DNA of 64,000 nucleotides, from the sequence record NC_048674.1; one strand, 5' to 3'. The notes beneath the pieces are model-generated. The model was not told where the DNA came from. It saw only the letters and a list, made by a program, of their open reading frames with translations, and ran no database searches. Both the position numbers and the translations under genes were made by a program. Positions 1 to 47,740 of the stretch are shown here, one piece after another. Every line of letters begins with the position of its first letter. The stretch's first letter is position 1.

Positions 1-655
1 GAAATCGTCCATCATCTGAGTAACAAGGGAGGTTGTTGGAACGATTAGCAATATTTTCCCATCATAATTAGTCATATACCAGTAACAAATAAGAGCTGCT
101 ATTAGGGATTTACCGGCAGACGTAGGAAGGTTTAAGATACCCCGGTTATTCTGAATTGCGTAATAAACCGCATCAGCCTGATACCAGTGCGCGGTAATCT
201 TATTTCCCCCAGAATATATATCAATATCAGCCAACCATTTATCAAACTCTTCTCTAGATGTGAAATGGTTAATAGGAGTAAAGTCTTCTTCTTTTTCAAA
301 TTCGTATTCGTTTCTANGCCAGCCATAATACCATGAGAAAATTCCCGTCTCATAAACTGGTAATCCGCGAAATCGTCCATCATCTGAGTAACAAGGGAGG
401 TTGTTGGAACGNNNNNNNNNNNNNNNNNNNNNNNNNNNNNNNNNNNNNNGCGCAATATTTCTCAAGGTTATTGACCAGACCATAAGGGAATTTTCCATCA
501 GGTTGTAGGAGACGGATCCGACCATCCCAACCGCTATATTTAANNNNACCACCTTCCGTCTCAAATGAATAATACTCTCTCAACTCCATGAAGATGTCAC
601 GTTCACACTCGATAATTGCATTACTATAGTCGTTGAATTTAACTGATACTTTCAT
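1..655 (-). CDS. uvsW: UvsW DNA helicase, 5' part (fragmented by assembly gaps, runs off window start)
   Basis: N-terminus MKVSVKFNDYSNAIIECERDIFMELREYYSF...WDGRIRLL matches T4 UvsW. Positions ~1-295 read WYQADAV...NLPTSAGKSLI (Walker A)...IVPTTSLVTQMMDDF. Positions ~295-411 are a misplaced downstream piece next to an N gap. Confidence 0.88.
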
Positions 656-15372: not shown

Positions 15373-16128
15373 AATGGCAAAGAAAGAGATCGTTGAAACT
15401 CGTTGTGGTATTGACTTTTACCTTAATAAGTTTAATGAAAAGTGTTCCACTCGAAATGAAATTATGGAATGTGAACGAGATTGGATAGGTTGTTATCTTC
15501 CAAAGAAATACAAATATGTTGTTATGGAGTCCGATGGATTGTTCTATGCATATTCCAAAAAGCCGGTTCTTAAACAATACTCATGTGGTCTTGGGTGGGG
15601 TGTAGACTCAGTACAAGGTGCAGGCGATAATAACGTTGAGGTATGGTTTAATGATAGTGATTTCGGTTGGAAACCATGGTACAGTGGTTATTGTAAAATC
15701 GAAGGTTAAAAATGACACCAGTCAAGTATTGCGAAGAACACCGAGTTAGGTATTACGAATATGGGTGTCCTCAATGTAACATACGCAACGAAAGAGAAAA
15801 CCGGGTCATAAGAGAAATGTCCATCAAGAAAACAAAAAATGGACTAACATGGCCTTTGAGCAAATCAGAAAAGAAGGTTTAAAAATGAATCAATATTTTG
15901 AAGTAACTGGTGATGACCCGCTGTTTGTGTTGTTGAAAGAATCAGAAAAAGCAAATAAAGCTTTTAAAGATAAAAGATCGAATGAAAATTGGGAATTGTT
16001 AAATCTTGCATATGATGTAGTAGAGGAAATTCTATACAGTCGTTATCCAGATTGTTTTGGTTGGCGGGCTGTTGTATCTCCTTTTGACGAAGACCGTTTC
16101 TTGGTAAAAATTAAAGGGTAATTTATAA

Positions 16129-16164
16129 AAAGGGCTTGTAATCGTTCAAGCCCTTTGATAAAAT
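16129..16164 (+). promoter_or_regulatory. Terminator/promoter cassette (-35 in the stem)
   Basis: Stem aaagggcttg/caagcccttt. TTGTAA - 17 nt - TAAAAT. Confidence 0.65.
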
Positions 16165-16407
16165 TGTATCAAAGTGAAATAAGGAAAAATTATGTTTATT
16201 TCCTCTATTGATGAAAATGAAAAGCTAGTAGTTCAATCCAAGTATGATTCGGGTGTCCATCTAGGTTTCACCGCAGGCGTCCAGAAAGATGGTGAATATA
16301 CTCTGACTACTCTAGACAAAGAGCTTACCGCCCAACAGATCTCGTATCTTGAGATGATGTTGATGATGGAAATCAAAAAGATGCTAGACCCACGCTAAGG
16401 AAAAATT

Positions 16408-16620
16408 ATGAAAGTCCAGTTTAAATCAGAAGAAGCTATGACTGAGTTTAAAACGTTAGATCGCAACAACGAAGAACTAGCAAATGCATATGGTATGAGT
16501 CCCATCCCTATTGGATTTGTAGATGAAGAATGGTGGGATATCTTTAATGAGGAAGATCTGCATTTTTACACCATTAACATTTCCGACGAATCTCACTATT
16601 TCGATATTTTGGAAAATTAA
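16408..16620 (+). CDS. MKIRFK-family paralog 1
   Basis: MKVQFKSEEAMTEF...GMSPI...WWD...ESHYFDILE. Confidence 0.8.
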   Translation: MKVQFKSEEAMTEFKTLDRNNEELANAYGMSPIPIGFVDEEWWDIFNEEDLHFYTINISDESHYFDILEN

Positions 16621-16623
16621 TTC

Positions 16624-16674
16624 AAAAACGCTTGCTCTCGGGTAAGCGTTTTGTTATTCTATTCTTGTTGAAGC
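16624..16674 (+). promoter_or_regulatory. Terminator/promoter cassette (PeSL-like), copy A
   Basis: Stem aaaacgcttgc/gtaagcgtttt. TTGCTC - 17 nt - TATTCT. 50/51 nt identical to 17251-17301. Confidence 0.85.
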
Positions 16675-17028
16675 AAAACAGATGAGGAAAATAACATGGC
16701 AGAATTTATCACAGAAACATCTAACAAGACTCACCACAAAGTGGTTCAACTTCGCAAGGCCATTCGCAAGGTTGATACCGCAAAGATTGCTATCTTTCGG
16801 AAAACAGATTTGACTGATGCATATCGTGAGTACAACTACGCAATGTATCGTGCAGTTGAGGAAACCGGGGATCACAAAATTTATATCGACTTCAAATACA
16901 ACCAACCAAAAGAGAAAATAATTGATCTGGTCGAAAAAATTTGTTCCATAGAAGACACCAAGGTAGAATGGAATGGTTCTATGGGTAGTTCCATCGTTGT
17001 TACCATCAAAGTTGAATAAGGAAAAATT

Positions 17029-17238
17029 ATGAAAGTCCGTTTTGTGTCAGAAAAAGCCATGAATGAATATGGTGAAAAAGACCGTCATAACAAGCTCGTT
17101 GTAGAACGTTTTGGTATGAACCCATTTGAGGTAGATACGGATCCCGATTGTGCTTGGTGGGACTATCTCGACGAAAATGGTGATATTGAGTTTGTCTTCC
17201 CCCGTTTTGAACATCATTACTTTTTAACCAACGTTTAA
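17029..17238 (+). CDS. MKIRFK-family paralog 2
   Basis: MKVRFVSEKAMNEY...GMNPFEV...WWD...EHHYF. Confidence 0.8.
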   Translation: MKVRFVSEKAMNEYGEKDRHNKLVVERFGMNPFEVDTDPDCAWWDYLDENGDIEFVFPRFEHHYFLTNV

Positions 17239-17250
17239 GAAAATAATTCA

Positions 17251-17301
17251 AAAAACGCTTGCTCTCGGGTAAGCGTTTTGTTATTCTATCCTTGTTGAAG
17301 C
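17251..17301 (+). promoter_or_regulatory. Terminator/promoter cassette (PeSL-like), copy B
   Basis: Near-identical to 16624-16674. Confidence 0.85.
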
Positions 17302-17457
17302 GAGACTGATAAGGAAAACGATATGACCAACTTTGAATTTGCTATGAAACGCGCTAAATTCCAAATCACCAAGCACAAAGAGACTTTGATCTGTGCTGGT
17401 ATTGTTGGTGTTGTTCTTTTCGTTATCATCCCTATGTTGAACGGTTAAGGAGTTATT

Positions 17458-17844
17458 ATGCTGAACAAACGTTATACTGTAAAAAAAGATTTTGAAGATT
17501 TCCACAAAGAATTTCCCGAACTGGTTTTGGGTTCTTCTTTCACGGTAACAGGGACAGACGGAACCGGTATCATATCTATCACCATGGATAGTGGAACTGA
17601 ATATCATATCGAACAATATCCTTGGTGTTGGTGCTTCTACACAGAAGATATGATAGAAGAATATCTTGTCCAAGTTGAAAACCTCACAGACGAAGAAAAG
17701 AAAGACTTGATAGTTGCCAACTTGAAGAAGAAAGAAAAGGAGATGGAAGAAAAGAAAGCTTTGTTGTTGGCAAATTGGGAGAAGGAAGAGAAGGAGTTGA
17801 TTGAAGCTCTGGAAAACCATCGCAAAAATAAGCCGGGGGTTTGA
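17458..17844 (+). CDS. MLNK..WCFY-family protein with C-terminal coiled coil
   Basis: N-terminal domain aligns with 25051-25290. Confidence 0.7.
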   Translation: MLNKRYTVKKDFEDFHKEFPELVLGSSFTVTGTDGTGIISITMDSGTEYHIEQYPWCWCFYTEDMIEEYLVQVENLTDEEKKDLIVANLKKKEKEMEEKKALLLANWEKEEKELIEALENHRKNKPGV

Positions 17845-18838
17845 TATGATTTCTTTGGTGGCATTATCTTGTTATGCTCCGATATACTTCATTGTTCAGC
17901 TAGGGGAAAAGATAAATCGTGATGTGATTCTATCTTGTATTCTCATGATCTTTACTATCGTTCTGGTATTCTGTACCACCACGATCACCCTAAAATATGG
18001 AACAAACCCGGTGGTATTGTTTTGGATTTGTCAAACGAACATCCTTACTTGTCTGATGGCTAAAATAATTTCAAAAAGTCTTTGACTCTATAGCTAGTTC
18101 TGGTAATATACCTATGTACCCCCACTGATGAGGAAATTGAAATGAAAATTCTTTTTACCGACCACCAAGCCGAACTAATCAACCGCATCAAGGCTTATCA
18201 CGATAACCGCATCGCTCTGACAATTTCCCCTGAGTCTCGCGCATTTCGCGATATGATGGAAGGACAAGAGTTGTGCAATTCTCAGTGTATTGCTCTCCGC
18301 AACTTCTTCGGTCGGGTCATCGATTATGATGCATGTGATAATGATATCGCTGCTGATGAAATGACCAAATACATGTACGGGGTTATGCGTGACCAAGTTC
18401 GCAACTGGCTGTTTGAGGAATAAGATATGAAAAAGATTATGGAAGCTCTGGGATATGTTTGGTTCGAAACCCGTGGCGATTTTGTTGCTACTATCGGTCC
18501 ATGGGAAGAGAGTTATACCTATTATGAAGAAGCTGATTTCCCTTGCTGGTTGAAACTAGTGGATTCTCTCGATAGCCCATACAACGCAAAAACAATTATG
18601 ATTTACGACCGTGTTTCTGAATCTCTGGTGGGAGAAATTAAGTTTGAAAAATTGTGATTTGATTAAGATTCTTCAAGAACGAGATCCAAATGCAAAAGTA
18701 GAATTTGTTTTCTTCGGTAATCATTTTGACGTTGAAGGGCTAGTACATTTTGACCCAACCGGTTATAACGCTATCGAGCTGTATGGTAAGGCGTTACATG
18801 AGATGGAAATTGTTGTTACTTTCAACCAAGGATAAAAT

Positions 18839-19337
18839 ATGTTCTATGCACTGAAAAACAAATATACTGGTAAAGTTGCTATGGTAGAGGTGTGTGGTGA
18901 AGCTGTTTATTTGGTAGATGATGAAGCAATTGGAGATCATGCAGTTGCTTTTGTCTACACCGAAACCACCTCACAGAAAATTCAAGATACGTTGGATGGT
19001 GTCAACGACAATCTGTTTGTCCAAATCGACCCAGAACAATACGATATCGTGGAAATTCAAATTTAGAAGATGATTTTGTAAAATGGGAATTGTTGTTACT
19101 TTCAATCAAGGATAAAATATGATTCTCTATGCGTTAAAAAATAAACATACTGGGCGGTTAGCAGTCATTGAAGGCGCGGATTTGTCTATCGTTGTTGATG
19201 AGTATTCTGAGGTTATGTATCCTTTTGTGGAACGACGTTTGGAAGATATCCATCATCTGTTGGAAGACCGCCACACAGACTATTACCGTGGTATTAACCC
19301 AGACGATTACGATATCGTGGAATTTATTTTGAAATAA
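18839..19337 (+). CDS. Two tandem paralogous ORFs (18839-19066, 19119-19337)
   Basis: YALKNK.TG..A..E N-termini and PE/DD.YDIVE C-termini. The upstream junction sequence is also duplicated. Confidence 0.75.
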
Positions 19338-19343
19338 ATGATA

Positions 19344-19381
19344 AAAAGGGCTTGCTTCGGTAGGCCCTTTTCGACTATTAT
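19344..19381 (+). promoter_or_regulatory. UUCG terminator / early promoter cassette
   Basis: aaaagggcttgc-ttcg-gtaggccctttt. TTGCTT...TATTAT. Confidence 0.75.
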
Positions 19382-19649
19382 ATCCATATCGAAATTAGCC
19401 GAGGGAATTAACATGAACTTCTTTAATTATATTGTTGTGATGAAAACTGTTAACGGTATGGAAAGATTTTTGGTCTCTGCTATGGATCCTTCTAAGGCCA
19501 AGAAAAAGGTTATGGATTACTTGGTTGACGAATGCATTCCGTTTAGTTGTTCCTATCCGAGGAATGAAACTATACGAGTTGCAGATTCCCAAGTGGAAGA
19601 AATGAAAAATCGCTCTGATATCAAAACCCTTTATGTTTAAGGATCTATT

Positions 19650-19868
19650 ATGAAAATCAAATTCAAATCCGAAGCACATATGAACGAGTTCGCAAATATC
19701 AACCTTGGTTGGTCTTCCCACAATAAAGATCTGGTTCTTCGTCATGGTATGAACCCTTTCGAGGTTGAGGTTGATATTACTGAATCTTGGTGGGATACGG
19801 TAGATGGTGATTTCACTATCCATAAAACTGGTGAAGGAATTTATTTTGAAATAGTTGTTGCATCGTAA
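19650..19868 (+). CDS. MKIRFK-family paralog 3
   Basis: MKIKFKSEAHMNEF...GMNPFEV...WWDTVDGDFTI...YFEIV. Confidence 0.8.
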   Translation: MKIKFKSEAHMNEFANINLGWSSHNKDLVLRHGMNPFEVEVDITESWWDTVDGDFTIHKTGEGIYFEIVVAS

Positions 19869-22337
19869 TCCTGTTCTGGTATTATATCCATATCGAATCA
19901 CTGGTGATTCTTCGAGAGGATGAAATCCTCTCTATCGAAACGAGAGACGGAAAGGAAGAAATCATGAAACTCAGCAAAGCCCAAAACGAAGTAGTTGCTA
20001 TTTGTGTTGCGGAAGTTGAGCGTCTTTGGAACCAGTATCAAGTTGATTTGGTTCGCTGGGAAAACACTCCCAAGGGTAAGGCAAAAGAAGATATGACTTT
20101 CCGTCTGGGTGCTGTTAACCGTGCTACTGTTCGCGCTCTCATTAAGGCTGGTGTTCTGATTGTTGACCACAAGTTCAGTGTAAAAGAGCCTACTTTGAAG
20201 AAATATAACTATGGTCGCGACCGTGTTTATGGTGACAACTATTACGAAGAAAACATTTACCGTTTGAACAAAGAATTTATCAAATAACTCTTTACGCTTG
20301 TTTTTGCTTTTGGTAATATGTCTGTACACCAACTGAGAAGGAAATGACTATGAACACCAAACTCCGTAATCGCCTGAATAACATGCTTGGTAATCAAACT
20401 CTGGTTTGCACTTCTACTATCGGAACCATTACCATGAAGGCCGCACTTGATAATGGTGGTATGGACTTTGTTGTTGATGTGAGTATCACCACTGAAAATG
20501 GTGTTGAGAATAAAGGCCGTATGTACACCAAACAGGCGCTGGAAACTTACGGTGATTCCATCTCTCATATCGTTGTTAAGAATTATTAAGGGAAATCATG
20601 TTCGCATTTACCCGAGTAATATTTCTTTGTATTATCTATGGTGTTGGGTCTAGCCATTGTGGGGAGTATCATTGGGTTGGTACACTGTCGGTAACTCGTC
20701 GTGGACTTGTGATAAAGTATTGTCAAGGTAACAAATGGCGTGTTATGCTGGTAACAACTCGCGGCCTTTACAAAAACATTCAATCTGGGGTATGGAAAGT
20801 ATTATGAAAAGTTTTATCGTTTCCTTCAAAATTCAAAATGCATTTGGTGATAAAGTCCTTACCGAATACGTTTGGGCATACACCCCGAAATGTGCAGTCG
20901 AGAAGATCCAAGAAAAATATGTTGGCGTTTATCACGCTAAAGCAAAACTTGCTATCTAAGGGGATAGTATGAAAAATAAAATTCTTGTAGAACTAGTTGC
21001 AAAACAAACCAGTGATCTGATAAAATCTAATGGTCATCGAATGGCACTGGTGGCTTTGGGTAAATGGATTGAAGCCACACCATATATCACTGACGAGGAA
21101 CTTAATTTCCTCATGAATTTGGTTAAAGTATATCAGGAGCAATAATCATGGCTAAAGGTAAAGTAACTGCAAAATCTCTCCGCGCTGGTCAGACTGTATA
21201 TCGTGTATGTGGTCCTACTGGTTTCATCACCAAGCTTCTGATCACCTCTCGTCCNTTTGTGTANAAGAAAAAAGATTCTGTGCTNAATGGTACTATCTGG
21301 GTGAACTATCGTAAGTGGTTCAAAACCAATAGTTACAAATTCGGTGTGGTTCGAGAAGTGAGTAACTTCTTTAATGATGATTTCAGCCTTACCGATGCTG
21401 GTATTGGTGGTAGTCATCCGGGTGGTACTAATCGCACCTTCTACACTTACAAGGCTGCCAAACGCTGGTCTGAGCACGTTAAATCGCTTCCTAAGAAACA
21501 GGAGTGCTGGGACGACGATCTATGGAGCCCAACCGATTATGATGACTTTCTAAGGGGATAGTATGATGGTTTTGATTGATACAAAGAATGTCCAACTTAA
21601 GTTATATTGGATGTCACAGGATACGATTGATACTTATCCGAGCGAGAAGGCTCAAGTCATCGAATTTATTATGTCTCTGGATAGTGATCTGGTTCCAATG
21701 GTCGAACTTAGTATCGACGAATATAATTTTCTTTTGCAAGTTATGTAAAAACTACTTGTAACGGTAATCGATTTATGGGATACTTTCCTTGTTGGGGAGT
21801 TTCCCACTTTCATTAGAGAATTTTATATGTATATTCGCTTTGATATTCAAGACCTGTTGGAACTTCTGGAAATGATTGGTGTGGGTTATTACGCTACCGA
21901 GACCAATTATGATGCAGATATCGGTTTTACCCAGACCAATTACATTTTCGATATTGACGGCCACAGGGTTATCCTGACTGAGCCAAGCTTCAATGATTAC
22001 GTTACCACCTGCGAGGTGAGTGATGTTGCTACCATGAAATATCTGGCGGAAGAAAACAATATCCCGTTTGAAATGAAAGACCACTACCTGTAAGGAGTTT
22101 ATTATGATGGATTTTATTAATAGTCAATTTGGTTTCGTTCTTATTACCACCATGTTTCTGTGTGGTATCGTGTTCAACGGTGTTGCAACCTATTACGAAT
22201 CTCGCAAATACAGTAAGATGGAGAAATTCCTTTCTTACTTGATGCACTTTGCCTTGTGTGCAATGTCTATCAACGGGTATGTTGAACTTCTGAAAATTAT
22301 GGATTTCAGCAAGATTATGGGTTGAAAATAAAATGAT

Positions 22338-22373
22338 AAATGGCTTGCTTCGGTGAGCCATTTGTTTTACTAT
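22338..22373 (+). promoter_or_regulatory. UUCG terminator / early promoter cassette
   Basis: aaatggcttgc-ttcg-gtgagccattt. TTGCTT - 17 nt - TACTAT. Confidence 0.75.
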
Positions 22374-22672
22374 GTGTATATCGAAACGGGAGGTTCTTAT
22401 GGTAAACGAAATGATGAATGCAATCGCTATCAAGCTGGAAGAAGCAAAATCCAAAAAGCGTCAGGGTCTGGTTTATCGCAATGCATATGCGGTACTGGAA
22501 AACGGCCCGGATAGCGTAGACTATGTTGTTTCGGTTCACGTAGAGGCTACTATCGAATATGATGGAAAAGCGCGTGANGAAGCNCAACGCCGAGCTGATG
22601 TNATNCAAACAGAGTTGGGTTATCTTGGTTACGGTTATACTGTTGTTCGTGTTGAAGTCTAAGGAGAATATT

Positions 22673-22969
22673 ATGGAAATCACCATCGCCCTGCGTGAAG
22701 CTTTCGAATCCGTTAAATGTTTGTCTAAGAAATTTGAGGTTTCTGACCGGGATTTTGATGAGAACATACAAACCCTCTCCAACATCTACATCGCTGTTCC
22801 TATGGGTGAGGATGAGATCCGGGGTTATATTGATTCCGCCATTCGTAATATCGATGATGCAAAAACTGTTTTTGACCGTGGTGATTCTTATGAGGATGAT
22901 CTGATTGGTATTCACCTTGATATGGCTCTGGTAAATCTCCGGGCNGCAATTTNTTACGCTTCTAAGTAA
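22673..22969 (+). CDS. Helical hypothetical protein, paralog of 46103-46420
   Basis: Shared R.Y...A...........I..D....NLRAA pattern. Confidence 0.6.
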   Translation: MEITIALREAFESVKCLSKKFEVSDRDFDENIQTLSNIYIAVPMGEDEIRGYIDSAIRNIDDAKTVFDRGDSYEDDLIGIHLDMALVNLRXAIXYASK

Positions 22970-22978
22970 GGAATNAAT

Positions 22979-23458
22979 ATGAAACTGAAATTCAAATCCC
23001 CTATTNTCCGCTCCAAATTCATGTCTCGTTTTGGGTTGACTGAATGGGGTAAGAAAGCCATTGATGCCATTGAGAATGGTGCTAATTGGCAGAAGGAAAC
23101 TAAGTATGATGGTTATTACACACGGGATTACTCGTTTGGTAAGGACTATCTGACCATCATCGAAAGCGTCTCTTATTTCGAAGTTGTCATTGAAGAAAAA
23201 GCTTGGTTGATTGCGAACGGATATGGCGCTGTTACAACCACTGATGAGAAGGTTGCAGAACACTATTCTATCACCAACAAAACCCCTATGGCGGAAGTTC
23301 CGTTTATCCGTGTTGATGGTGAGTTGTATGTGTCCATCAACGAAGTTAAGATGAATGAATCCGTTCAAGCTCAAATTGATAAGCGCCTCAAGAAACAGGA
23401 AATTGCTAATAAAGCTGGTATGACAGTACAAGAAATGGAAAATATTTTTCGGAATTGA
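22979..23458 (+). CDS. MKIRFK-family paralog 4 with a C-terminal extension
   Basis: MKLKFKSP..RSKF...ESVSYFEVVIEE followed by an ~85-aa extra domain. Confidence 0.7.
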   Translation: MKLKFKSPIXRSKFMSRFGLTEWGKKAIDAIENGANWQKETKYDGYYTRDYSFGKDYLTIIESVSYFEVVIEEKAWLIANGYGAVTTTDEKVAEHYSITNKTPMAEVPFIRVDGELYVSINEVKMNESVQAQIDKRLKKQEIANKAGMTVQEMENIFRN

Positions 23459-23783
23459 TTGACTCCATTTGGTGATCTGGTAATATACACATATACCCAC
23501 TGAGGAAGAAAAGGAAATTGCCATGAACTACGTCGTTTCCCTTGCCAAGAAAGTTATCAACGTTGCAGAGAACAATATCACTGATGANNTGTATNATGCA
23601 GCTCNAACCGTNTNTGNTGTCGATTATGACTGGGCTTGCGAAATGATTTATCTCGGTGATGTGGAAGAATGTATCGAGGTTATCCGGGCTTATATGGAGT
23701 TCCTGAATTGCTTCCCTGCTCAATATTGGATTAGCGATCTGAAAGATGAGATGGAAGAAATCAAAAATCTTTTGAAAAATTGA

Positions 23784-23835
23784 TTGACTCTGAAAGAGTG
23801 TTTTGAGATACTAGCTTTGTCGGGAAATGGTTCCC
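23784..23835 (+). promoter_or_regulatory. Early promoter cassette shared with 46433-46484
   Basis: TTGACT...GATACT. gagatactagctttgtcgggaaatggttccc is 29/31 identical to 46454-46484. Confidence 0.75.
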
Positions 23836-24593
23836 TCTCTTAAAAAGGAAATTGTCATGACTGCACAAATCTTCTTCGCTACTCGTTCCGCTGCTCGTGT
23901 TGCTGGTTTTGGTAAAATGACTGACAATGGTACTCAGGCCACCAATCGTTGGGCTCGTACTGTNGATGTGAACTCTACNGGGAACAAAACCCTGTCTGTT
24001 GGTCGNGGTGTTCGNAAGAANGGTTGCAAGGCCGTTACCATCATCACCAAGAAAGCAAAAACTCTGGTTCACTAAGGAGCTNATTATGTTCTCNTTCTTC
24101 CGTAAAATCGACCCCAAAGCCGCNGCCATGGTACAGTATATGGATACNCATCCGACTGGNGATATCTTTGGTGATACGCCACGGACTGTTTTCTTTGAAG
24201 GTTTTCATCTTGGTTTTAGTTGTGATGCCGAAGGAAAACCCCGCAGTATTTTCCTTAACAAATCCAATACCAATGGCGGGACTACATGTATTGAGATTTT
24301 CGATATCAATAACAACAAGAAAGAAATCAAAGCACTGGATAATGCGCGACACCGANCCCTTAAACGTTANAATAACCATACACAAGAAAAGGNNNAAGCN
24401 AAACGNCNGGAAGCTCTGGATAGTCTGGAAGTATGATGAATATCCTCATTTCCTTGGTTCTGGTATTACTCGGCCTCTTTCTTGTTCATGTTGCTGAATG
24501 GGCTGGTAAAAAAGATGCAAATGGTGGGATTGGTGGGTTGTTTACTCTGGTAATCTGTTTTATAATGTTTGTGTTGATTGTTAAGGAGCTAGT

Positions 24594-24836
24594 ATGAAAA
24601 TTCGTTTCAAAGATACCGACGCCCAATATGAATTCTTGTGTATGTCTGATGCAAATGCAGCTATTGCAGAATATATGGGAATGGATACCCATGACGCCAT
24701 TTCGTATGAAGAGTGTGGTAAGACCATCATTGCTCTGGTAGACGTTAACGGCGACCCAATCACTGTTGGTGAATTCGACCAGTGGGAAGCACAGGTACAT
24801 CAAGGTGAACAACAGTTCTTTATCATTGAGGAATAA
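24594..24836 (+). CDS. MKIRFK-family paralog 5
   Basis: MKIRFKDTDAQYEF...ANAAIAEYMGMDTHDA...EQQFFIIEE. Confidence 0.8.
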   Translation: MKIRFKDTDAQYEFLCMSDANAAIAEYMGMDTHDAISYEECGKTIIALVDVNGDPITVGEFDQWEAQVHQGEQQFFIIEE

Positions 24837-25050
24837 TTTAGTGTCAAAGACCAATCACATTCCGAGCATAAAAAGCGTCTGGGACCAAGGCCGTCATCCA
24901 GCAAACTCACGAATCATTGGCCTTGAATCATTAGCACGAAGTGGTTCAACTAGTGAGGTAAGGCGCAAGGCTATTGTGGCACTAAAGAGAGATTTCGGAA
25001 TTGAATTCAAGGGGTGAATACTGTTCGCCAACTATTAGAGGAATAAAGAT

Positions 25051-25290
25051 ATGCTAAACAAGAAATTCAAAATCATCGAAGAAGTAAGCCCTATCATGAA
25101 ATCAGAGTTTCCACTGATGGTAGTTGGTAACTATTTCACAGTAAAAGAAACCCTCAANNCNGGNTANACCGAAGGGATTACGGTGATTGANATGGATGAT
25201 GGTACTATCTACAATATCCAAGATAGCTCAATGTCTTGGTGCTTCTACACCATTGGTATGATCCCGTGGCGTCTGGTGGAGATTAAGTAA
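25051..25290 (+). CDS. MLNK..WCFY-family protein
   Basis: Aligns with the N-terminus of 17458-17844. Confidence 0.7.
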   Translation: MLNKKFKIIEEVSPIMKSEFPLMVVGNYFTVKETLXXXXTEGITVIXMDDGTIYNIQDSSMSWCFYTIGMIPWRLVEIK

Positions 25291-26058
25291 ATGAAAATTC
25301 GTTTTAAAGATGAAAAAGCCATGGAAGAGTTTTCTAAACGGGATCCGTCTTTCCACCGCCACAACCACAACATGGTTAAGAATTTTGGTATGAAAACCTT
25401 CAAAGTAGAGATTGACGATACCGGTGATTTCTGGGATACTATTGATGGAGATTTCACTATCAAAATTGAAGACGAAAGCCATTACTTCACTATTGTTGAG
25501 GAATAAATTATGAAGATTCGTTTTAAAGATGAACAAGCCCATCAGGACTTCTCCAATTGTCGTGCTAACGTTGCTATTGCAAACTATATGGGAATGGATA
25601 CACACGAAGCATACAATTATTGTAGCGGGGATATTGGGCTGATAGATGATAATAATTGTGGTATCACTATTCCAGATCCATATATCTCTGGGTTTGAAGG
25701 GTGGAATGCGGTTATCCATAAGGGTGAGCGTCGTTACTTTGTTATTGAAGGGGAATAAGATATGAAGATCCGTTTCAAGTCAGAACAGCATCTACGCGAT
25801 TTTAAAGCTGCATCGGTAGAAAATTTGGAAATCGCGGATTTTATGAGAATGCACCCTGTTGAAGTAGTTAAGATCCATGGTCATTACTACATCGAAACCG
25901 ACATTCTTGATTGTACTCTTATCCTNGAATCCGAACACGATTTCTTCGATTGGATTAAAGATGATCCCAAAACCCTTTTCGATATCATGTTAGAAAAGAA
26001 GGCTGAATACGACAAGGCTTTCAACGACTATATCCAATCGGTTAAAGAAAACAGTTGA
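25291..26058 (+). CDS. Three tandem MKIRFK-family paralogs 6-8 (25291-25506, 25510-25758, 25762-26058)
   Basis: All start MKIRFK[DS]E and end with an E..[YF]F.I motif. The third adds a KKAEYD coiled-coil tail. Confidence 0.85.
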
Positions 26059-26119
26059 CCGTTGAGACGGTTATCTGTATATTGGGACTTGTCAAAAATC
26101 TTAGGTAAGGGGAATTTAA

Positions 26120-26419
26120 ATGGATACTACATCTTTCATCGAACCACTTCTGGGCAAGACTCAAACCATTAAGTCTATCTATTACTCATTCGTTGATAAA
26201 GGTTACGCTGACCCACAATATAACCTATTTGTCCCTATTGAGAAACTTTCCTCTACCGGACACAAAGTAAAAATGAAAGTTGCAAATACCAGCTCAAATC
26301 TAGCCTTTACTTACGAAGACGATTCAGGTATTCTCAACGTGTACATTGATGGGGAAGTAGATTTCGTTCCCAAGGTTTATATCGTCAATGGTAAAGTCCA
26401 AAATAGTAAAGGAGAATAA
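26120..26419 (+). CDS. Hypothetical protein
   Basis: Behind a TTGACC promoter at ~26056, with RBS. Confidence 0.6.
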   Translation: MDTTSFIEPLLGKTQTIKSIYYSFVDKGYADPQYNLFVPIEKLSSTGHKVKMKVANTSSNLAFTYEDDSGILNVYIDGEVDFVPKVYIVNGKVQNSKGE

Positions 26420-26422
26420 ATT

Positions 26423-27370
26423 ATGTCAGATATTATGCGTATCCGTTTCCCCAGTGAAGATCACCGGAGTCGATTTATAGCTCATAGCGTACACGCAAAC
26501 ACCCACATCGCCAAACATATGGGTATGGATTGGAATCGTGTATCATTCAATGGTCGTCGTTGGTCTCTGGTGGATGAGAACAATAAGGATGTGGTTATTG
26601 GTGGTATTGATGTTGCCACTACTATCCTTCCTTTGGAATATCAATTTTTCGAATGGGATATTCTCCCAGTAGAAAATAAACCTTCCATTAAATCTCTCTG
26701 GGATATTGCACAACAGAAGAAAGCAGAGTATGATGATGCTATGGTTGAATACAACAAAGCAGTAATGGAGAAACTTGATGAAAGTGCGATTTAAAAATAT
26801 CGAATCCAAGTTTGCGTTTACCACTGGTGGACGAGCTAATATGTCTATCGCCGAATACATGGGTAACGATTTCCATGAAGCCAAATCGTGCTTTGATGGA
26901 AGCATCGAACTCGTGGATAGCAAAGGGAATAATATTACTCTCAATACGTATGGTAAAGCAGTTCCAGACAATGGATGGAATGCTTGCTTCTTTGAAGATG
27001 AAACTCAATATTTGGAGATGCATTATGAAGATTAAGTTTAAAGACGAACAGTCCCGACACGAGTTCCGCCAATGCGATAATCTTAATAAAGATATCGAGT
27101 TTAAGATTGGTAATGAACCACATGAAGTAATCCAGAATGAACATGGTTGGTATCTCTCCAATGATGGATTAAAAATAATCATCAATGGGTTTTATGCTTT
27201 CATCAGTTCCCGCGAAATGAANGTATTTTGATATTGTTGAAGATGTTATCAATCCCATGGATANCATTGAAGCTCTATGGGNNCTATGGNANGATGTACA
27301 AGAAAAGAAAGCTGCTTTTGAACGTAGCTTGGAACTTTACCACGCTGAATATAATCGAATGTTCCGCTGA
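26423..27370 (+). CDS. Three tandem MKIRFK-family paralogs 9-11 (26423-26794, 26775-27035, 27025-27370 with an N-associated frameshift at ~27222)
   Basis: Starts MRIRFPSE, MKVRFKN and MKIKFKDE. Removing the N in atgaangtattttgat gives MKYFDIVE and opens the frame to ...QEKKAAFE...RMFR*. Confidence 0.75.
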
Positions 27371-27395
27371 ATCATCAAACGATCATGAGAGGGGT

Positions 27396-27426
27396 AAAAT
27401 GCACTTTTTTGGTGCATTTTCTTTTT
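27396..27426 (+). terminator. Intrinsic terminator ending the paralog cluster
   Basis: aaaatgcac/gtgcatttt stem followed by ctttttat. Confidence 0.7.
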
Positions 27427-27474
27427 ATACAACCATCAAAACATTTTCTCTCTATCCCTTGCTGTATAAGGGAT

Positions 27475-27548
27475 TCTGTTAATATTCTTTCACATATTTT
27501 CATAACTTTTCATATCTGTTAACATTCTTTCATATTTTGATAATGTTT
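27475..27548. repeat. Imperfect direct repeat in an AT-rich intergenic gap
   Basis: tctgttaatattctttcacatattttcataac vs tctgttaacattctttcatattttgataat. Confidence 0.65.
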
Positions 27549-27589
27549 GGTTCTTAAATTAAAAAGTTTGATTCTAGAACAAAAAAGTG

Positions 27590-27618
27590 TGGACACACAT
27601 TAGGTGATGTAGTACCAT
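27590..27618 (+). promoter_or_regulatory. Early promoter
   Basis: TGGACA - 17 nt - TACCAT. Confidence 0.55.
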
Positions 27619-28304
27619 GTTCTTACTGACTGATTGGAGATAGAATCTCCGTGGAGATAGATATGAAAAACATTCGTGAAATTGCTGCTGAAATGAAAAC
27701 TTTGTTGAACTCCCGTGGTTATGGTATTACTTCTGTATTTGGTATGTATCTTGATAACAATGCTATGATGGTTATCAAAGGCCGTGAGTTGGAAAAGGTA
27801 GCGCGTGACTTTGCGTTAGTTCGTGGTATTCATTCTATTGTGATTGCAGAAGAACTTTGCTATGATTCAGTTGACTTTGAAGATCCGACTAGTGAAGCTG
27901 AGTTGGTTCGTGTGTTGAAGTGCTGCATTGACTATGTGGAGTAAGATATGGAATGGGTTATTGGTGTTGTTGCTCTGGTGTGGTGTTTCTTGATGTTTGC
28001 TTATATCACTGAAAACAAGTTTAAGAACGAGCGGTATTCTATTCGTGATTGGTTGAAGTATCATGGATTTGGTGTTCATATTCATCGCAATGACTTTCTT
28101 CTTGATAGTTGTCAAATGGTTCGTCTTGGTGGTATATCTCAATGTAATAAATGTCTTTCTTGGGTTGTGTACTGGAAACTGTACAATATCCGCCGAAAGA
28201 AATTGAGTCGTGAAGATACTATTAAGAAACTGAATGCGTTGGTTAATGGTATGGTTGTTGAGCGGATTAAGCGTGAGAGTAAGAAAGATTTTTGGAAGGA
28301 TTAG

Positions 28305-28613
28305 ATGAAGAATCTCATTGCTTTATTGGCTGTGATTGGATTGATTGGTTGTGTTCCCAAAGTAGTTCATCAAGAAACTTATCGAGATACTGTTGTTGTT
28401 ACTGAGTTTGTGAAGAGGCATAAGCGACAGCGGATTAAGGTAATAACATCTGATGGTGTTTTGATTAATCAATATGTTGCTAAACGCTGTAGTGGGTGTT
28501 ATGCTTACAAGGGTGATAAGTTCTCAGTGACTGTTACCAAGAAAACTTGGAATGATGGTGATGTTACTTATAGTATCAACCGTTATGAGACTAAAGAATT
28601 TTTGAGGAAATGA
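28305..28613 (+). CDS. Lipoprotein, CxxC family member 1
   Basis: Lipobox LIGC, then TVVVTEF...CSGCY...GDK. Confidence 0.75.
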   Translation: MKNLIALLAVIGLIGCVPKVVHQETYRDTVVVTEFVKRHKRQRIKVITSDGVLINQYVAKRCSGCYAYKGDKFSVTVTKKTWNDGDVTYSINRYETKEFLRK

Positions 28614-29203: not shown

Positions 29204-29512
29204 ATGAGAGCATTAATTGTTGGTCTAACTTTGTTGTTGGTTGGGTGTGCACCGGTTGGGATTGTTAACACTTTTAGCNTTAAGGAATCAGTAACCGTTA
29301 TCAAATGGGATCCTGTCAATCGGTTTATTAGTTTTGTTTCTGATAGTGGATTGGTAGTGACTAACGTTTATATCTGGGGCGCATGTGAGGGGTGCTATTC
29401 TATCATTGGTGATAAGATGGATATTACTATCACCCAACAGGTGAAAAGCAACAATACAACCGAACTTGTTGTAGATTCAAACGAGGTTGGAAAACAGATG
29501 AGAAAGTTTTAA
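29204..29512 (+). CDS. Lipoprotein, CxxC family member 2
   Basis: Lipobox LVGC, then ESVTVIKW...CEGCY...GDK. Confidence 0.75.
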   Translation: MRALIVGLTLLLVGCAPVGIVNTFSXKESVTVIKWDPVNRFISFVSDSGLVVTNVYIWGACEGCYSIIGDKMDITITQQVKSNNTTELVVDSNEVGKQMRKF

Positions 29513-30311: not shown

Positions 30312-30659
30312 ATGAAACACGTACTGATTGCTCTGGTTGCTTTGTTCGTTCTGGTTGGTTGCAAGAAAGAAGTTAGCGAAGTTTCTTTCGTTGATACTGT
30401 GACTGTTACCAAGTTCGTTAAGAAGCATTCCGATAGCCAGCGTGTGAGCGTTACCACTTCCGAAGGTATCGAGATGAACAACCACGTTGTTTCTCAGAAG
30501 GGTACAAACTGCCTTGGTTGCTATGCTAAAGCTGGTGATAAGCTGGAAGTCACTGTTAAGAAAACTACCTATGAGGATGGTTCTGTTCATTACTCTTTCA
30601 ATAAATCTGAAATGAAAACCGCTCTGAAACTGAACCGTCGTAACAACTATGCCAACTAA
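30312..30659 (+). CDS. Lipoprotein, CxxC family member 3
   Basis: Lipobox LVGC, then DTVTVTKF...CLGCY...GDK. Confidence 0.75.
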   Translation: MKHVLIALVALFVLVGCKKEVSEVSFVDTVTVTKFVKKHSDSQRVSVTTSEGIEMNNHVVSQKGTNCLGCYAKAGDKLEVTVKKTTYEDGSVHYSFNKSEMKTALKLNRRNNYAN

Positions 30660-44900: not shown

Positions 44901-47740
44901 GATTCCATGATGGATCTTGACAACTATATTCGAAATCACGTTAAAGAAGTTGATGTGATTCGCCAACTGGTGTACCATAAGAAAGAACGTAAAATCTCTC
45001 TCGTTGGTTACAACGAGTTCAAAATCGAGGGTTAATGATGAAGATTGGTTACTGTCACTACAGCACGTTCATGAGTCAATGGACGGTTTGGATCGGCGAA
45101 AGTGGTGAATTTAAAGACGCAATTAGGTACAATCCTGATGATTGTGTTGTCGACCACAAAGCAGGTACAATCGAGATAAACAACGATGGTGTTATCTCGA
45201 ATTGGGAATTCAACCCAAACTCTCCTATTGGAGATACCGTTTATAAAGCATTTGTTCGTGAAGAAAAAGAATATATTGTAGGTCGCGAATATACCAAGGT
45301 ATGGATTACCTCAGAAATGAGTATTACGATCCCAACCGAATTCCTTAAACGAACTAAATTCCGTTCTCAGGAATGGTTCATCAAGGAATACAAACGGTAT
45401 ATCGGTAGCAAATACCCAAGTGATATCAAGACGATTACCAGTAGCGTCATTGATATGATGATTCGCCATCACCTGTATCGTCATCGGGGTTTGGAGGATT
45501 GTCAGACCATCCCAACAGTATACAAAACAGTTGATATCCTCAAAGAAGCATTAGGTTCCATCAATTTCACTATGGAAGATGTATTTGTATGAAACAATAT
45601 TCGTGGAATCAAGGGGTTACATTCATCCCACTGGAATTTGACGATCAAGCATATCTGATTGATAATTTCCAGCTAATGATCGATATGTTGACAGAACATC
45701 TGGAAAAGAATCCGGACCCTGTTCATCGTCACTGGTTAGATTGCTTAGAAGTACGATATAAAAATATTTGCAAACAATCGCAATTAGAGCGTTGACATCC
45801 AGTCGTATTCTGATAATATAGGTCTTGTCGAAACGGGGAGTGTTCCCCTTAAGGAGAGAGAAATGAAAAAGTTCAATTACGCTGTGTCTATCAAGGTTCT
45901 GGGTTCTACCAATATGAAAGATTTCTTAGTGGAAGCAGTAAGCTTGAAACTTGCATATATCACCGTGTTAAATTATCTCGAATCTCAGGGGATCACTCAC
46001 AGTCCAGACTTTTCAATGAACACCGTTGGTCGCGTTGGTTCTAGTCAAGTTGAAAGTCTGGTACAATCTGGTTTCACCATCGTTAAATAAGAGGATAACA
46101 CTATGACTCATATCACTATGCAACAACTCCGCGAACTCATTATGGGTATTCAGTCCGAACTGGTAATGGTAAATGCCAAGGTTGTTACTGGTATTAGCTC
46201 CAACTTCACTTTTTCCCAAACCGCCAACGACATGAAAGAATTGATGAACAACTTGGGGCCTTGTGAATCACGCAACTACGTAGAGAAGGCCACAATCGAG
46301 TTCAAGAACTGTCACGATGTATGTGCGGCTCATGACGGAGAGATTACTGAAGAGTTCAGTATCTATATGGATCTGGTTGTTGCCAATCTTCGGGCTGCTT
46401 ACATCAACCTCGGAAAATAATTTAAAAAGTTGTTGATCGGTATTCCGGCCTATGAGATACTAACTGTGTCGGGAAATGGTTCCCAAAGGAGATTAAGATG
46501 GATAACGTATTGCTTGCTCTGCATGATGTTAAAGGTTTCAAGCATATTGATCTGACTCAATTTGAGGACAAGATCGTTGTTGTTCTTGAATCTGGTGTCG
46601 AAATGGTGTATGAAAGCTATTACGATGAAGATTTTGAGGGTGATGTACATTGCTACTATGACAAAGTGACTGGTGGTGGTGTTGAATCCTTTGACTTTCA
46701 AGATGTTCTGGATTACGAGGTCTGATATGAAAAAGAAAATCATTGATGATATCAATAGTGCAATCGATATTTTCGAAAACGAATCTCGGTTCAAAGGTAC
46801 TAATGATTGTATTGGTGTGACGATTTTCTCTTTGAATGGCGGCCCTTATTTCGAACACCATACATTTGCTTTTCAGGCTTTAGTACGGGCAAGTGAAGTT
46901 TTCAATAAGTACCAGATCGCAACAGAAAACGAATTTTTTAATGTTCAAGATGTGGATGTACGACAAGCGTACTTTGATGTAATCGTTTCTGAACTAAAAT
47001 TGGCTAAAACTTTTGTAGAAAAGTACTTGATCGAATAATCACGTTATGAGATACTATCCCTGTTGAGACGAGACACCAATTAGGAGAATGACTATGATGA
47101 ATCAAATCGAAGTAATGGTTGCTGAAATGATGGCCTTCTCAGAAGAAGTATACTTCAACAAGGTTATCCCTGATATGAAAGAACGTTTCGATGAGGAACA
47201 TGTTGAGTCTTTCGTTAGTCAAAACCTGAATCGCAATTCTTACTCCATCATGAAAGGTCGTAAGTTTGCCCGAATCGTCCGTCACGACTTTGGACGTGAG
47301 GATACTACCGGTTCCGTTGTCTGGTTTGTTAACATGGAAAACGGTAATATCCACAAGGCAAACGGTTGGGCTTCTGCATCCAAATATGTTCGTGGTAACG
47401 TGAGCAACTGGAAAGACGCTATGCATGTTGGTTCTCGCTCCGGTATCTACGGTTTCATCGCGATTCGCTAAGAGGAAAAATTATGATTATTAGTCTGAAT
47501 ATGCATGAGTTTTATGAACTTTACCCGTGTTATCAAGAGTGGGTTTGTAATGAATCCCCTTCCCAATATTCTATCAATGCGGTTTATAATCGTATGATGC
47601 ATAAGAAATCTCTAAACGTTATGGAAGCTCAGGAAGTTATGGCGTTTATTGCTTGGGTTGAAAACAACTCTTGCAAAGAAGATCTAGAAATCCTCAAATC
47701 AACTATCCAATATATGAAAGGTGTATTAAATGCTGCTTGA
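41907..47740 (+). other. Run of small hypothetical early ORFs
   Basis: 41907-42183, 42187-42372, 42438-42682, 42691-43011, 43004-43360, 43511-43735, 43738-44163 (two-TM membrane protein, SWHYRL...SLCPYFW), 44239-44655, 44652-45035, 45035-45592, 45589-45795, 45863-46090, 46103-46420, 46498-46725, 46727-47038, 47088-47471, 47483-47740. Confidence 0.65.

What the first reader, a model, noticed from the sequence alone, without database searches (positions are those of the whole stretch)
16408..27370. Expanded family of at least 11 small 'MKIRFK' paralogs, diversified into subfamilies
Seen: ORFs at 16408, 17029, 19650, 22979, 24594, 25291, 25510, 25762, 26423, 26775 and 27025 share MK[IV][RK]FK[SD]E.[AH]...F...N...[IL]...G[MN]..[HF]E...D..G...I...E..YF.I. 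More remote candidates are 39913 (KYKFKS), 54650 and 55218 (IYRFRS). Three subgroups are visible: GM.PFEV..WWD (16408, 17029, 19650, 25291), AN..IA.[YH]MG[MN]D (24594, 25510, 26423, 26775) and P[HV]EV...HG.Y (25762, 27025). Six or seven sit in a near-contiguous 2.8-kb array. The scaffold is conserved while the middle is highly variable. Inference: a gene-accordion family of early proteins, each probably binding a different host target such as an anti-defence or host-takeover protein. This is a strong candidate for an undescribed system.
Basis: partly seen in the sequence, partly recalled or inferred. Interest (0 to 1): 0.78.

Follow-up and report, generated by a model that had tools for sequence, protein, structure and literature searches.

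The report
Ten GoF-like small phage paralogs
A T4-like Aeromonas phage carries ten diverged copies of a small acidic protein that is a stand-alone version of the N-terminal beta-barrel of phage T4 GoF, a named domain family whose function is still unknown, so the paralog family is real but not an undescribed system.

Summary
The window is bases 1-64000 of Aeromonas phage AS-sw (T4-like, Ceceduovirus). Ten of the eleven listed ORFs form a real family; similarity runs the full ~70 residues, not just the first six. ORF 22979 shares only its ribosome-binding site and first seven codons. Remote candidates: 55218 is borderline, 39913 weak, 54650 unsupported.

The family is already catalogued. It matches PHROG 2980 ('goF mRNA metabolism modulator') and its sister PHROG 3089, and RefSeq names seven of the ten 'goF'. 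Family profiles match residues 11-91 of T4 GoF (E about 1e-6; hhalign 88-93%). That is the domain Kim et al. 2025 described as the GoF/Frd.2/MotB.1 'LSm-like fold'.

An AlphaFold2 model (pLDDT 94) gives five strands with a helical hairpin after strand 1. No solved structure matches significantly. All ten proteins are acidic.

The paralogs are old (mostly under 50% identical). Orthologs are under purifying selection (dN/dS 0.03-0.46), so 'gene accordion' is not supported. Copies do come and go between close relatives, at conserved hairpin-promoter flanks. The whole genome holds 13-14 copies, against three in T4.

Function is inferred: small binding modules acting on host or phage mRNA-metabolism factors.

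Verdict: real, a lineage-specific expansion of a known kind, of moderate interest.

The parts
16408..16620 (+). Family member, subgroup A, 70 aa, pI 4.1
   Evidence: phrog_2980 E 4e-24; family HMM E 1e-22; RefSeq 'goF mRNA metabolism modulator'
17029..17238 (+). Family member, subgroup A, 69 aa. This cassette is absent from AS-zj and CC2.
   Evidence: phrog_2980 E 3e-22; HMM E 2e-22; no ortholog found in L007 or L008
19650..19868 (+). Family member, subgroup A, 72 aa. This is the protein that was modelled.
   Evidence: phrog_2980 E 6e-25; AlphaFold2 pLDDT 94.1, pTM 0.81, order strand-helix-helix-strand-strand-strand-strand
24594..24836 (+). Family member, subgroup B, 80 aa; first of the seven-member array
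   Evidence: phrog_3089 E 2e-29 and phrog_2980 E 3e-7; HMM E 2e-23
25291..25506 (+). Family member, subgroup A, 71 aa. Its start codon directly follows the stop of the PinA-like gene 25051-25290.
   Evidence: phrog_2980 E 4e-19; only a 30-nt match in AS-zj
25510..25758 (+). Family member, subgroup B, 82 aa
   Evidence: phrog_3089 E 2e-28 and phrog_2980 E 3e-8
25762..26058 (+). Family member, 98 aa: barrel plus a C-terminal extension of about 30 aa
   Evidence: phrog_2980 E 5e-20 over residues 1-67; its extension is 52% identical to that of 26423
26423..26794 (+). Family member, 123 aa: barrel (residues 5-80) plus a C-terminal extension of about 45 aa
   Evidence: phrog_2980 E 1e-20 and phrog_3089 E 2e-11; HMM E 1e-35
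26778..27035 (+). It overlaps both neighbouring genes.
   Evidence: phrog_3089 E 3e-29; annotation
27025..27370 (+). Family member broken by one frameshift. RefSeq annotates only a 68-aa product; the orthologs in CC2 and AS-zj and representative P0011 are 111 aa (barrel plus C-terminal extension).
   Evidence: phrog_2980 E 7e-18; ortholog lengths; the downstream piece is 81% identical to the C-terminus of P0011
22979..23458 (+). NOT a member. A 159-aa protein of phrog_26499 that shares only the ribosome-binding site and the first ~7 codons with the family.
   Evidence: (repeat D3, 82% over 33 nt)
16607..16707 (+). Conserved 3' flank of cassette 16408: 28-nt hairpin 16625-16652 overlapping a weak promoter-like motif. 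Repeated at 17234-17334.
   Evidence: (D5, 82% over 101 nt)
17234..17334 (+). Second copy of the same flank, with an identical hairpin at 17252-17279. The AS-sw / AS-zj / CC2 rearrangement breakpoints fall at these elements.
26055..26083 (+). Sigma-70-like promoter motif (10 of 12) overlapping hairpin 26056-26073, inside the array just after 25762. The architecture is PeSL-like.
27396..27420 (+). Terminator-like hairpin with a T-run that closes the array
17458..17844 (+). Neighbouring gene, not a family member: PinA-like (Lon protease inhibitor family), 128 aa
   Evidence: Pfam PF10465, 44.9 bits against a cut-off of 27; phrog_2167 E 7e-11
25051..25290 (+). Neighbouring gene: short PinA-like paralog, 79 aa. 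In phage avDM6 its homolog is fused in frame to a family barrel (P0049, 155 aa).
   Evidence: Pfam PF10465, 37.6 bits
55218..55499 (+). Borderline remote relative, 93 aa
   Evidence: HMM E 0.0045-0.03; phrog_8944 E 0.0066 and phrog_622 E 0.023

Best explanation
The ten genes are diverged paralogs. Each encodes a single-domain (about 70-85 aa) stand-alone version of the N-terminal small beta-barrel of phage T4 GoF. Three copies carry an added C-terminal extension. They belong to the GoF/Frd.2/MotB.1 domain family of T4-like phages.

Shown: family membership, the predicted fold, acidity, the variable strand 2-4 region, purifying selection on orthologs, copy gain and loss between close relatives, and location in cassettes flanked by conserved hairpin-promoter elements.

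Inferred: they are made early in infection and act as small binding modules. The conserved strand 1, helical hairpin and last strand form the scaffold. The variable strand 2-4 face gives each paralog its own partner. The partners are most likely host or phage proteins or ribonucleoprotein factors of mRNA metabolism, rather than naked RNA. New copies arise and are lost by recombination at the repeated hairpin-promoter flanks.
For: Identity of the family:
- PHROG 2980/3089 match the members at E 1e-18 to 1e-29.
- PHROG 2980 hits T4 GoF residues 11-91 at E 5.5e-6.
- The family HMM hits GoF residues 12-91 at 17-23 bits, E 1e-6 to 6e-6.
- hhalign gives 88% and 93% probability, E 3e-6 and 3e-7.
- The GoF domain is described in PMC12152347.

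Fold:
- The AlphaFold2 model has pLDDT 94 and five strands.
- BFVD Foldseek returns only uncharacterised proteins of T4-like phages.

Binding-module inference:
- All ten proteins are acidic, pI 4.1-5.9.
- The ends are conserved and the middle is variable.
- An in-frame fusion with a PinA-like Lon-inhibitor domain exists in phage avDM6.

Real genes:
- Ortholog dN/dS is 0.03-0.46.

Cassette turnover:
- Near-identical flanks surround diverged interiors.
- Breakpoints of replacement in AS-zj and CC2 fall at the hairpins.
- PeSL precedent: PMC2839356 and PMC4122927.
Against: - The reverse search is weak. A narrow profile of GoF orthologs finds family members only at E 0.03-0.2, although six of the top seven domain hits (five different members) are family members aligned in register.
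- The GoF ortholog model was too poor (pLDDT 53) to superpose.
- No experiment bears on these proteins, and wild-type GoF itself has no known activity.
- Early expression rests only on promoter-like motifs, which are no more frequent than in shuffled sequence: 43 found against 37 expected.
- The preference for protein partners over RNA rests on net charge alone.
- Conserved basic side chains at positions 2, 4 and 6 of strand 1 could equally serve RNA binding.
Confidence: 0.6

Rival explanations
1. They are RNA-binding, LSm-like chaperones that directly bind and stabilise or destabilise particular phage or host mRNAs, as the database name 'mRNA metabolism modulator' suggests. Each paralog would recognise a different RNA.
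For: - They are homologous to the GoF N-terminal domain.
- GoF(D25Y) raises the half-life of a reporter RNA, and the authors liken the fold to Hfq.
- Positions 2, 4 and 6 are mostly lysine or arginine, and the model places them in strand 1.
Against: - All ten are acidic, with net charge -2 to -13.
- Wild-type GoF and MotB.1 had little effect on the reporter, and the active form is read as a gain-of-function mutant.
- Foldseek against the PDB returns no Hfq or LSm protein; the best hits are weak SH3 domains at E 0.67 or worse.
- The element order (strand 1 before the helices) differs from the Sm fold.
Confidence: 0.2
2. They are anti-defence or host-takeover inhibitors locked in an arms race, each neutralising a different host defence or housekeeping protein.
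For: - They sit in a hyperplastic region of small accessory genes.
- Their middle surfaces are diversified.
- Presence or absence differs between close relatives.
- They are adjacent to, and in avDM6 fused with, a PinA-like inhibitor of the host Lon protease.
Against: - Orthologs show purifying rather than diversifying selection, dN/dS 0.03-0.46.
- The paralogs are old.
- No library of known anti-defence proteins was available, so no such match could be sought; PADLOC holds defence-system proteins only and gave none.
Confidence: 0.15
3. The resemblance comes from chance or from shared translation-initiation signals, and the ORFs are unrelated or non-coding.
For: ORF 22979 shows that the ribosome-binding site plus the first codons can be shared without the rest of the protein.
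Against: - Similarity is full-length, with E down to 1e-35.
- Conserved columns include the C-terminus.
- The fold prediction is confident.
- Orthologs are conserved under purifying selection.
- Synonymous differences in the first codons show that the constraint there acts on the protein (D1).
Confidence: 0.02

Closest known systems
T4 GoF (comC-alpha) N-terminal domain; the GoF/Frd.2/MotB.1 'LSm-like fold' family (Kim et al. 2025, PMC12152347)
   Same: - Sequence homology is detectable by profiles over GoF residues 11-91.
- Both are predicted five-stranded small beta-barrels.
- Both are acidic small proteins of T4-like phages in regions of accessory genes.
- The GoF suppressor positions D25 and G84 fall inside the aligned region.
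   Different: - Most copies here are the barrel alone (69-85 aa), without the linker and C-terminal domain of GoF (141 aa).
- There are 10 copies in 11 kb and 13-14 per genome, against three in T4.
- The host phage is a Ceceduovirus (Emmerichvirinae), not Tevenvirinae.
- Frd.2 and MotB.1 are not significantly matched by the family profile: E 0.012-0.037 for Frd.2, and 0.2 or no hit for MotB.1.
PHROG 2980 ('goF mRNA metabolism modulator', 72 positions) and PHROG 3089 (unknown function, 78 positions)
   Same: All ten window proteins match one or both end to end. These are the catalogued families to which the ten proteins belong.
   Different: Nothing structural differs. However, the PHROG name carries over a T4 gene name whose wild-type function is unknown, and T4 GoF itself belongs to PHROG 622.
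Hfq / Sm-LSm proteins
   Same: Both are small five-stranded bent beta-sheets. This is the analogy drawn in PMC12152347.
   Different: - No Hfq or LSm hit appears in the PDB fold or sequence searches.
- The helices follow strand 1 instead of preceding it.
- The proteins are acidic.
- No ring oligomer is predicted for GoF.
[not shown]
   Same: Weak Foldseek hits are dominated by SH3 domains.
   Different: TM-scores are only 0.37-0.41 with E 0.67 or worse, so this is a loose resemblance and not membership.
PeSL promoter-stem-loop cassettes of T4-type phages (PMC2839356, PMC4122927)
   Same: Hairpins overlapping sigma-70-like promoter motifs flank small ORFs in a hyperplastic region, and the breakpoints between close relatives fall at them.
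   Different: The sequence of the elements differs from the published ones. Aeromonas phages are not treated in the 2014 paper. Promoter activity has not been shown.
Poxvirus-type gene accordion (my own knowledge: recent tandem amplification of one gene under selection)
   Same: Both involve tandem paralogs and copy-number differences among relatives.
   Different: The copies here are 20-46% identical and each has conserved orthologs, so the expansion is ancient and stable rather than a recent amplification.

Membership tests
GoF/Frd.2/MotB.1 LSm-like fold family (PMC12152347) | Profile-detectable sequence homology to the GoF N-terminal domain | tested here: met
   phrog_2980 against T4 GoF residues 11-91, E 5.5e-6. 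Family HMM against GoF, E 1e-6 to 6e-6. hhalign 88% and 93%. Caveat: the reverse search with a narrow GoF profile gives only E 0.03-0.2.
GoF/Frd.2/MotB.1 LSm-like fold family (PMC12152347) | Bent five-stranded antiparallel beta-sheet in the domain | tested here: inconclusive
   The model of 19650 has five strands plus a helical hairpin, pLDDT 94. A GoF ortholog model shows the same order of elements but has pLDDT 53, so no superposition was possible.
GoF/Frd.2/MotB.1 LSm-like fold family (PMC12152347) | Two-domain architecture: N-terminal barrel, linker, C-terminal domain (119-141 aa) | tested here: not met
   Seven of the ten are the barrel alone (69-85 aa). Only 25762, 26423 and the intact orthologs of 27025 carry a C-terminal extension. 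The paper does not state that this architecture is obligatory.
GoF/Frd.2/MotB.1 LSm-like fold family (PMC12152347) | Encoded by T4-like phages among early accessory genes | tested here: inconclusive
   The phage is a T4-like Straboviridae member, and the genes lie in a unidirectional block of small ORFs. Early timing rests only on promoter-like motifs, which are not enriched over shuffled sequence.
GoF/Frd.2/MotB.1 LSm-like fold family (PMC12152347) | Effect on mRNA stability | not testable with these tools
   Shown only for the GoF(D25Y) mutant, not for wild-type GoF.
PHROG 2980 / PHROG 3089 | Full-length match to the family HMM | tested here: met
   All ten match at E 1e-18 to 1e-29 over nearly the whole profile.
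Hfq / Sm-LSm | Sm fold (N-terminal helix followed by five strands) with similarity to solved LSm proteins | tested here: not met
   No LSm or Hfq protein appears among 80 PDB Foldseek matches or in the PDB sequence search. In the model strand 1 precedes the helices.
SH3-like small beta-barrel | Significant structural match to solved SH3-type domains | tested here: inconclusive
   The top hits are SH3 domains, but at E 0.67 or worse and TM 0.37-0.41.
Gene accordion (recent tandem amplification) | Near-identical tandem copies | tested here: not met
   Identity to the reference member is 22-46%. The only direct DNA repeats between copies are short stretches at the 5' ends and flanks.
Gene accordion (recent tandem amplification) | Copy number differs among close relatives | tested here: met
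   17029 is absent from AS-zj and CC2, 16408 from CC2, and 25291 from AS-zj. Counts are 8 copies in the 20-kb AS-zj locus and 8-9 in the CC2 locus, against 10 here.
Known anti-phage defence system proteins (PADLOC) | Match to a PADLOC model | tested here: not met
   No meaningful match; one member scored E 0.011 against a model of unknown function.

The most novel reading that the evidence does not exclude
The phage keeps a library of 13-14 binders built on one tiny GoF-type barrel scaffold. Each would be tuned, through its variable strand 2-4 face, to a different host factor such as Lon, Rho, the RNA degradosome or defence proteins. The cassettes would be exchanged between phages at hairpin-promoter flanks. 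The fusion to a PinA-like Lon inhibitor in avDM6 would then be one example of such a barrel delivering or targeting an inhibitor. If so, the family would reveal what wild-type GoF does, a question open since the goF mutants were isolated.
Probability: 0.15. Interest if true: 0.7.

Novelty: new member of a known kind. Interest (0 to 1): 0.35.

Why it matters
GoF is an abundant early T4 protein (about 20,000 copies per cell), yet its wild-type function is still unknown. This phage lineage has expanded the bare GoF-type domain to 13-14 diverged copies. That gives a natural map of which positions form the scaffold and which form the variable surface. It also gives a confident structural model, and a gene fusion that links the domain to a Lon-protease inhibitor family. 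These are useful leads for working out what the domain does. None of it is a new kind of system: databases already name the family, and paralog families are common in these hyperplastic regions.

Tried and rejected
- Pfam and NCBIfam gave no significant family for any member. PADLOC gave nothing.
- PDB sequence and fold searches gave nothing significant.
- tblastn with one member found only Ceceduovirus-like Aeromonas phages and did not reach T4. Profiles were needed.
With the 10-sequence alignment it returned only AS-zj, CC2 and a 235-kb contig that I take to be phage 65 from its size, which is my own inference.
- The GoF ortholog model was low confidence (pLDDT 53), because the 120 listed relatives are at least 77% identical.
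- Iterative local profile searches did not bring 22979, 39913, 54650, Frd.2 or MotB.1 over threshold.
- Ten further window ORFs of 90-190 aa showed no GoF-type PHROG hit.
- The 214-nt unannotated spacer after 24594 gave only a short, weak match to the C-terminal extension of 26423 (E 0.015), too weak to call a remnant.
- The supplementary tables of PMC12152347 are not held, so I could not see whether its 210-sequence tree already includes these Aeromonas proteins.

Alignment and HMM tools printed consensus lines on their own.

Full report
**Where the window comes from.** Bases 16000-28000 match Aeromonas phage AS-sw (MF498775.1 / NC_048674.1) at 99.6% identity and at the same coordinates, so the window is bases 1-64000 of that record. 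AS-sw is a T4-like myovirus (Straboviridae, Emmerichvirinae, Ceceduovirus) of 230 kb. About the first 62 kb form a unidirectional block of roughly 155 mostly small, unnamed genes, interspersed with a few T4-type accessory genes: RNA ligase, ndd-like, a topoisomerase subunit, asiA-like and a Dam-type methylase. The window holds 206 N, which accounts for the X in some translations.

**Check of the observation.** All listed ORFs exist. Pairwise phmmer links 16408, 17029, 19650 and 25291 at E 1e-8 to 1e-18. It links 24594, 25510 and 26778 at E 1e-10 to 1e-17. Weaker cross-links join these groups to 25762, 26423 and 27025.
- A family HMM scores all ten at E 1e-17 to 1e-35 among 573 six-frame ORFs. 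Nothing else scores below E 1e-3, apart from the separated tail of the broken 27025 gene.
- The N-terminal motif occurs at the start of these ORFs and of 22979, and nowhere else in the window.
- Conservation is not limited to the first six residues. The 10-sequence alignment has four invariant and four nearly invariant columns spread from residue 1 to 66. With 36 relatives added, F5 and N25 stay invariant, and M1, F14, E62 and F66 stay at 90% or more.
- Mean pairwise identity is 46% in residues 1-16, 13-14% in the following loop, 32-34% around helix 2, 19-20% in residues 36-60, and 37-43% at the C-terminus.
- ORF 22979 is not a member. It belongs to another PHROG and shares only a 33-nt stretch covering the ribosome-binding site and first codons.
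- On the barrel alone, subgroups A and B are clear, 26423 leans towards B, and 25762 and 27025 are near-singletons. What unites 25762, 26423 and the intact orthologs of 27025 is a C-terminal extension of about 30-45 residues.
- The AS-sw copy of 27025 is broken by one frameshift relative to its 111-aa orthologs.

**What the family is.** Pfam and NCBIfam find nothing. PHROGs does. Subgroup A, 25762, 26423 and 27025 match phrog_2980 ('goF mRNA metabolism modulator', 72 positions). Subgroup B matches phrog_3089. Cross-hits run both ways. RefSeq already names seven of the ten 'goF mRNA metabolism modulator'.

I tested whether that name is deserved. [quoted passage not shown]
- T4 GoF belongs to phrog_622 but also hits phrog_2980 at E 5.5e-6 over residues 11-91.
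- The window family's own HMM aligns end to end with GoF residues 12-91 at 17-23 bits, E 1e-6 to 6e-6.
- hhalign gives 88% probability against GoF alone, and 93% (E 2.7e-7, 73 columns) between the 46-sequence family alignment and 121 GoF orthologs.
- The reverse search with the narrow GoF profile is weak, at E 0.03-0.2. Even so, six of the top seven domain hits, covering five different members, belong to the family and align in register.
- Frd.2 and MotB.1 are not significantly matched.

Residues 1-91 of GoF are exactly the domain that Kim et al. [quoted passage not shown] I put homology of the window family to that domain at about 85-90%.

**Structure.** An AlphaFold2 model of the 19650 protein, built on the 46-sequence alignment, is confident (pLDDT 94.1, pTM 0.81). 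It has strand 1 (residues 2-5), two helices (8-15 and 24-32), and then strands at 37-41, 47-50, 56-58 and 66-70.
- Foldseek against predicted viral structures returns only uncharacterised proteins of T4-like phages. Aeromonas phages come first (AS-szw, AS-zj, 65.2, 31, Aes508, 60AhydR15PP, Aeh1). Pectobacterium, Escherichia, Yersinia, Proteus, Morganella and Klebsiella phages follow at lower scores.
- Against the PDB nothing is significant. The best hits are SH3 domains at E 0.67 or worse and TM about 0.4, with no Hfq or LSm protein. A sequence profile search of the PDB is also empty.
- A model of a GoF ortholog came out at pLDDT 53 because its relatives are too similar to one another. It shows the same order of elements in the aligned region, but I give it no weight.

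**Distribution and copy number.** A profile search of 1.84 billion representative proteins finds only 49 clusters at E 1e-3 or better. Nearly all are 69-123 aa long and begin with the same N-terminal motif. The named ones come from Aeromonas phages (ZPAH1, Aswh_1, avDM6, Asfd_1); the rest are unnamed metagenome contigs.
- A scan of the whole AS-sw genome with the family HMM adds a copy at 85954-86319, one (and a weaker second) between the topoisomerase large subunit and rIIA at 177412-177971, and one at 210677-210898. The last lies upstream of frd, much as frd.2 does in T4, and RefSeq also names it goF. The total is 13-14. T4 has three.
- The 20-kb homologous loci of AS-zj and CC2 hold 8 and 8-9 copies. 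A 235-kb contig has one in the stretch fetched.
- On another T4-like metagenomic contig the domain occurs up to three times within 250-354-aa proteins that are themselves tandem paralogs.

**Evolution.** The paralogs are old: identity to the reference member is 22-46%. Orthologs in AS-zj and CC2 are under purifying selection, with dN/dS 0.03-0.46, highest for 26423. This does not fit a recent 'accordion'.

Turnover does occur, however. 17029 is missing from AS-zj and CC2, 16408 from CC2, and 25291 from AS-zj. The 16408 and 17029 units have nearly identical flanks: the ribosome-binding site plus the first codons, and about 85-100 nt downstream that includes an identical 28-nt hairpin. Their interiors have diverged. 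The segments replaced or reordered in AS-zj and CC2 begin and end at these hairpin elements. Several intergenic hairpins overlap sigma-70-like -35/-10 motifs. This is the architecture of the PeSL cassettes proposed to drive modular shuffling in T4-type phages. The reading is an inference: promoter-like motifs in the region are no more frequent than in shuffled sequence.

**Function.** Nothing is shown for these proteins. For GoF itself, deletion has no phenotype in the laboratory. The protein is abundant early in infection. Only the D25Y mutant stabilises a reporter RNA, and the authors leave open whether that effect is direct.

All ten window proteins are acidic (pI 4.1-5.9), as are 43 of 46 family members. 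That makes generic RNA binding less likely than binding to proteins or ribonucleoprotein factors. One caveat is that positions 2, 4 and 6, which are mostly lysine or arginine, lie in strand 1 of the model.

A further lead comes from the genes at 17458 and 25051, which sit next to family members. They are PinA-like, matching Pfam PF10465, the family of the T4 inhibitor of host Lon protease, above its cut-off. In phage avDM6 a PinA-like N-terminal half is fused in frame to a family barrel.

My best account is therefore a set of small scaffold-based binding modules with paralog-specific surfaces, acting on host or phage factors of mRNA or protein turnover. I give this about 0.6 overall: high for what the family is, and much lower for how it works.

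**Verdict.** It is wrong on novelty and on the accordion. This is a lineage-specific expansion of an already named, functionally unsolved phage domain family. I score it as a new member of a known kind, with interest 0.35.

Noticed in passing
window 17458-17844 and 25051-25290: Two paralogous genes (40% identical), annotated as hypothetical, match Pfam PF10465 (PinA peptidase inhibitor, the T4 inhibitor of host Lon protease) above the curated cut-off. Both sit next to GoF-like family members. In Aeromonas phage avDM6 the homolog of 25051 is fused in frame to a GoF-like barrel (P0049, 155 aa).
   Followed up: partly
window 16607-16707 and 17234-17334; also 16122-16191, 19338-19412, 22326-22398, 26055-26083: Intergenic hairpins overlap sigma-70-like -35/-10 motifs, a PeSL-like architecture. 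Two copies share an identical 28-nt hairpin. The breakpoints of cassette replacement and reordering between AS-sw, AS-zj and CC2 fall at these elements.
   Followed up: partly
window 22967-22999 (start of ORF 22979): An unrelated 159-aa gene shares 82% of a 33-nt stretch (ribosome-binding site plus the first seven codons) with family member 19650. This is either a recombination scar or a shared translation-initiation module. It is unexplained.
   Followed up: no
window 18062-18121, 19838-19897, 23439-23498: A 60-nt direct repeat family holds a TTGACT ... TGGTAATAT promoter-like motif, probably early promoters of this phage.
   Followed up: no
window 18839-19066 / 19119-19337; 28305-28613 / 29204-29512 / 30312-30659; 19413-19640 / 45863-46090: Three further small paralog families lie in the same hyperplastic region (23-47% identity, E 3e-5 to 1e-21). 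Gene duplication here is therefore not peculiar to the GoF-like family.
   Followed up: no
window 24837-25050: This unannotated 214-nt spacer after 24594 holds a short, weak match (8 residues, E 0.015) to the C-terminal extension of 26423. It may be a decayed remnant, but the match is too weak to call.
   Followed up: partly
AS-sw record 85954-86319 (-), 177412-177971 (+), 210677-210898 (+), outside the window (L011, L013, L010): Three or four more GoF-like copies lie elsewhere in the genome: one in the baseplate gene region, a tandem pair between the topoisomerase II large subunit and rIIA, and one upstream of frd that recalls the position of T4 frd.2.
   Followed up: partly
L006 7920-13569 (metagenomic T4-like contig SRR14300940_297): Here the GoF-like domain occurs up to three times within 250-354-aa proteins, and four or five such proteins are tandem paralogs. 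The same domain has expanded in a different way.
   Followed up: no
window 132-655 (-): Two short adjacent ORFs are both annotated as RNA-DNA and DNA-DNA helicase/ATPase, while a full-length helicase gene lies at record 126310-127743. The record is a 'partial genome' and appears to start inside a split or duplicated helicase gene.
   Followed up: no
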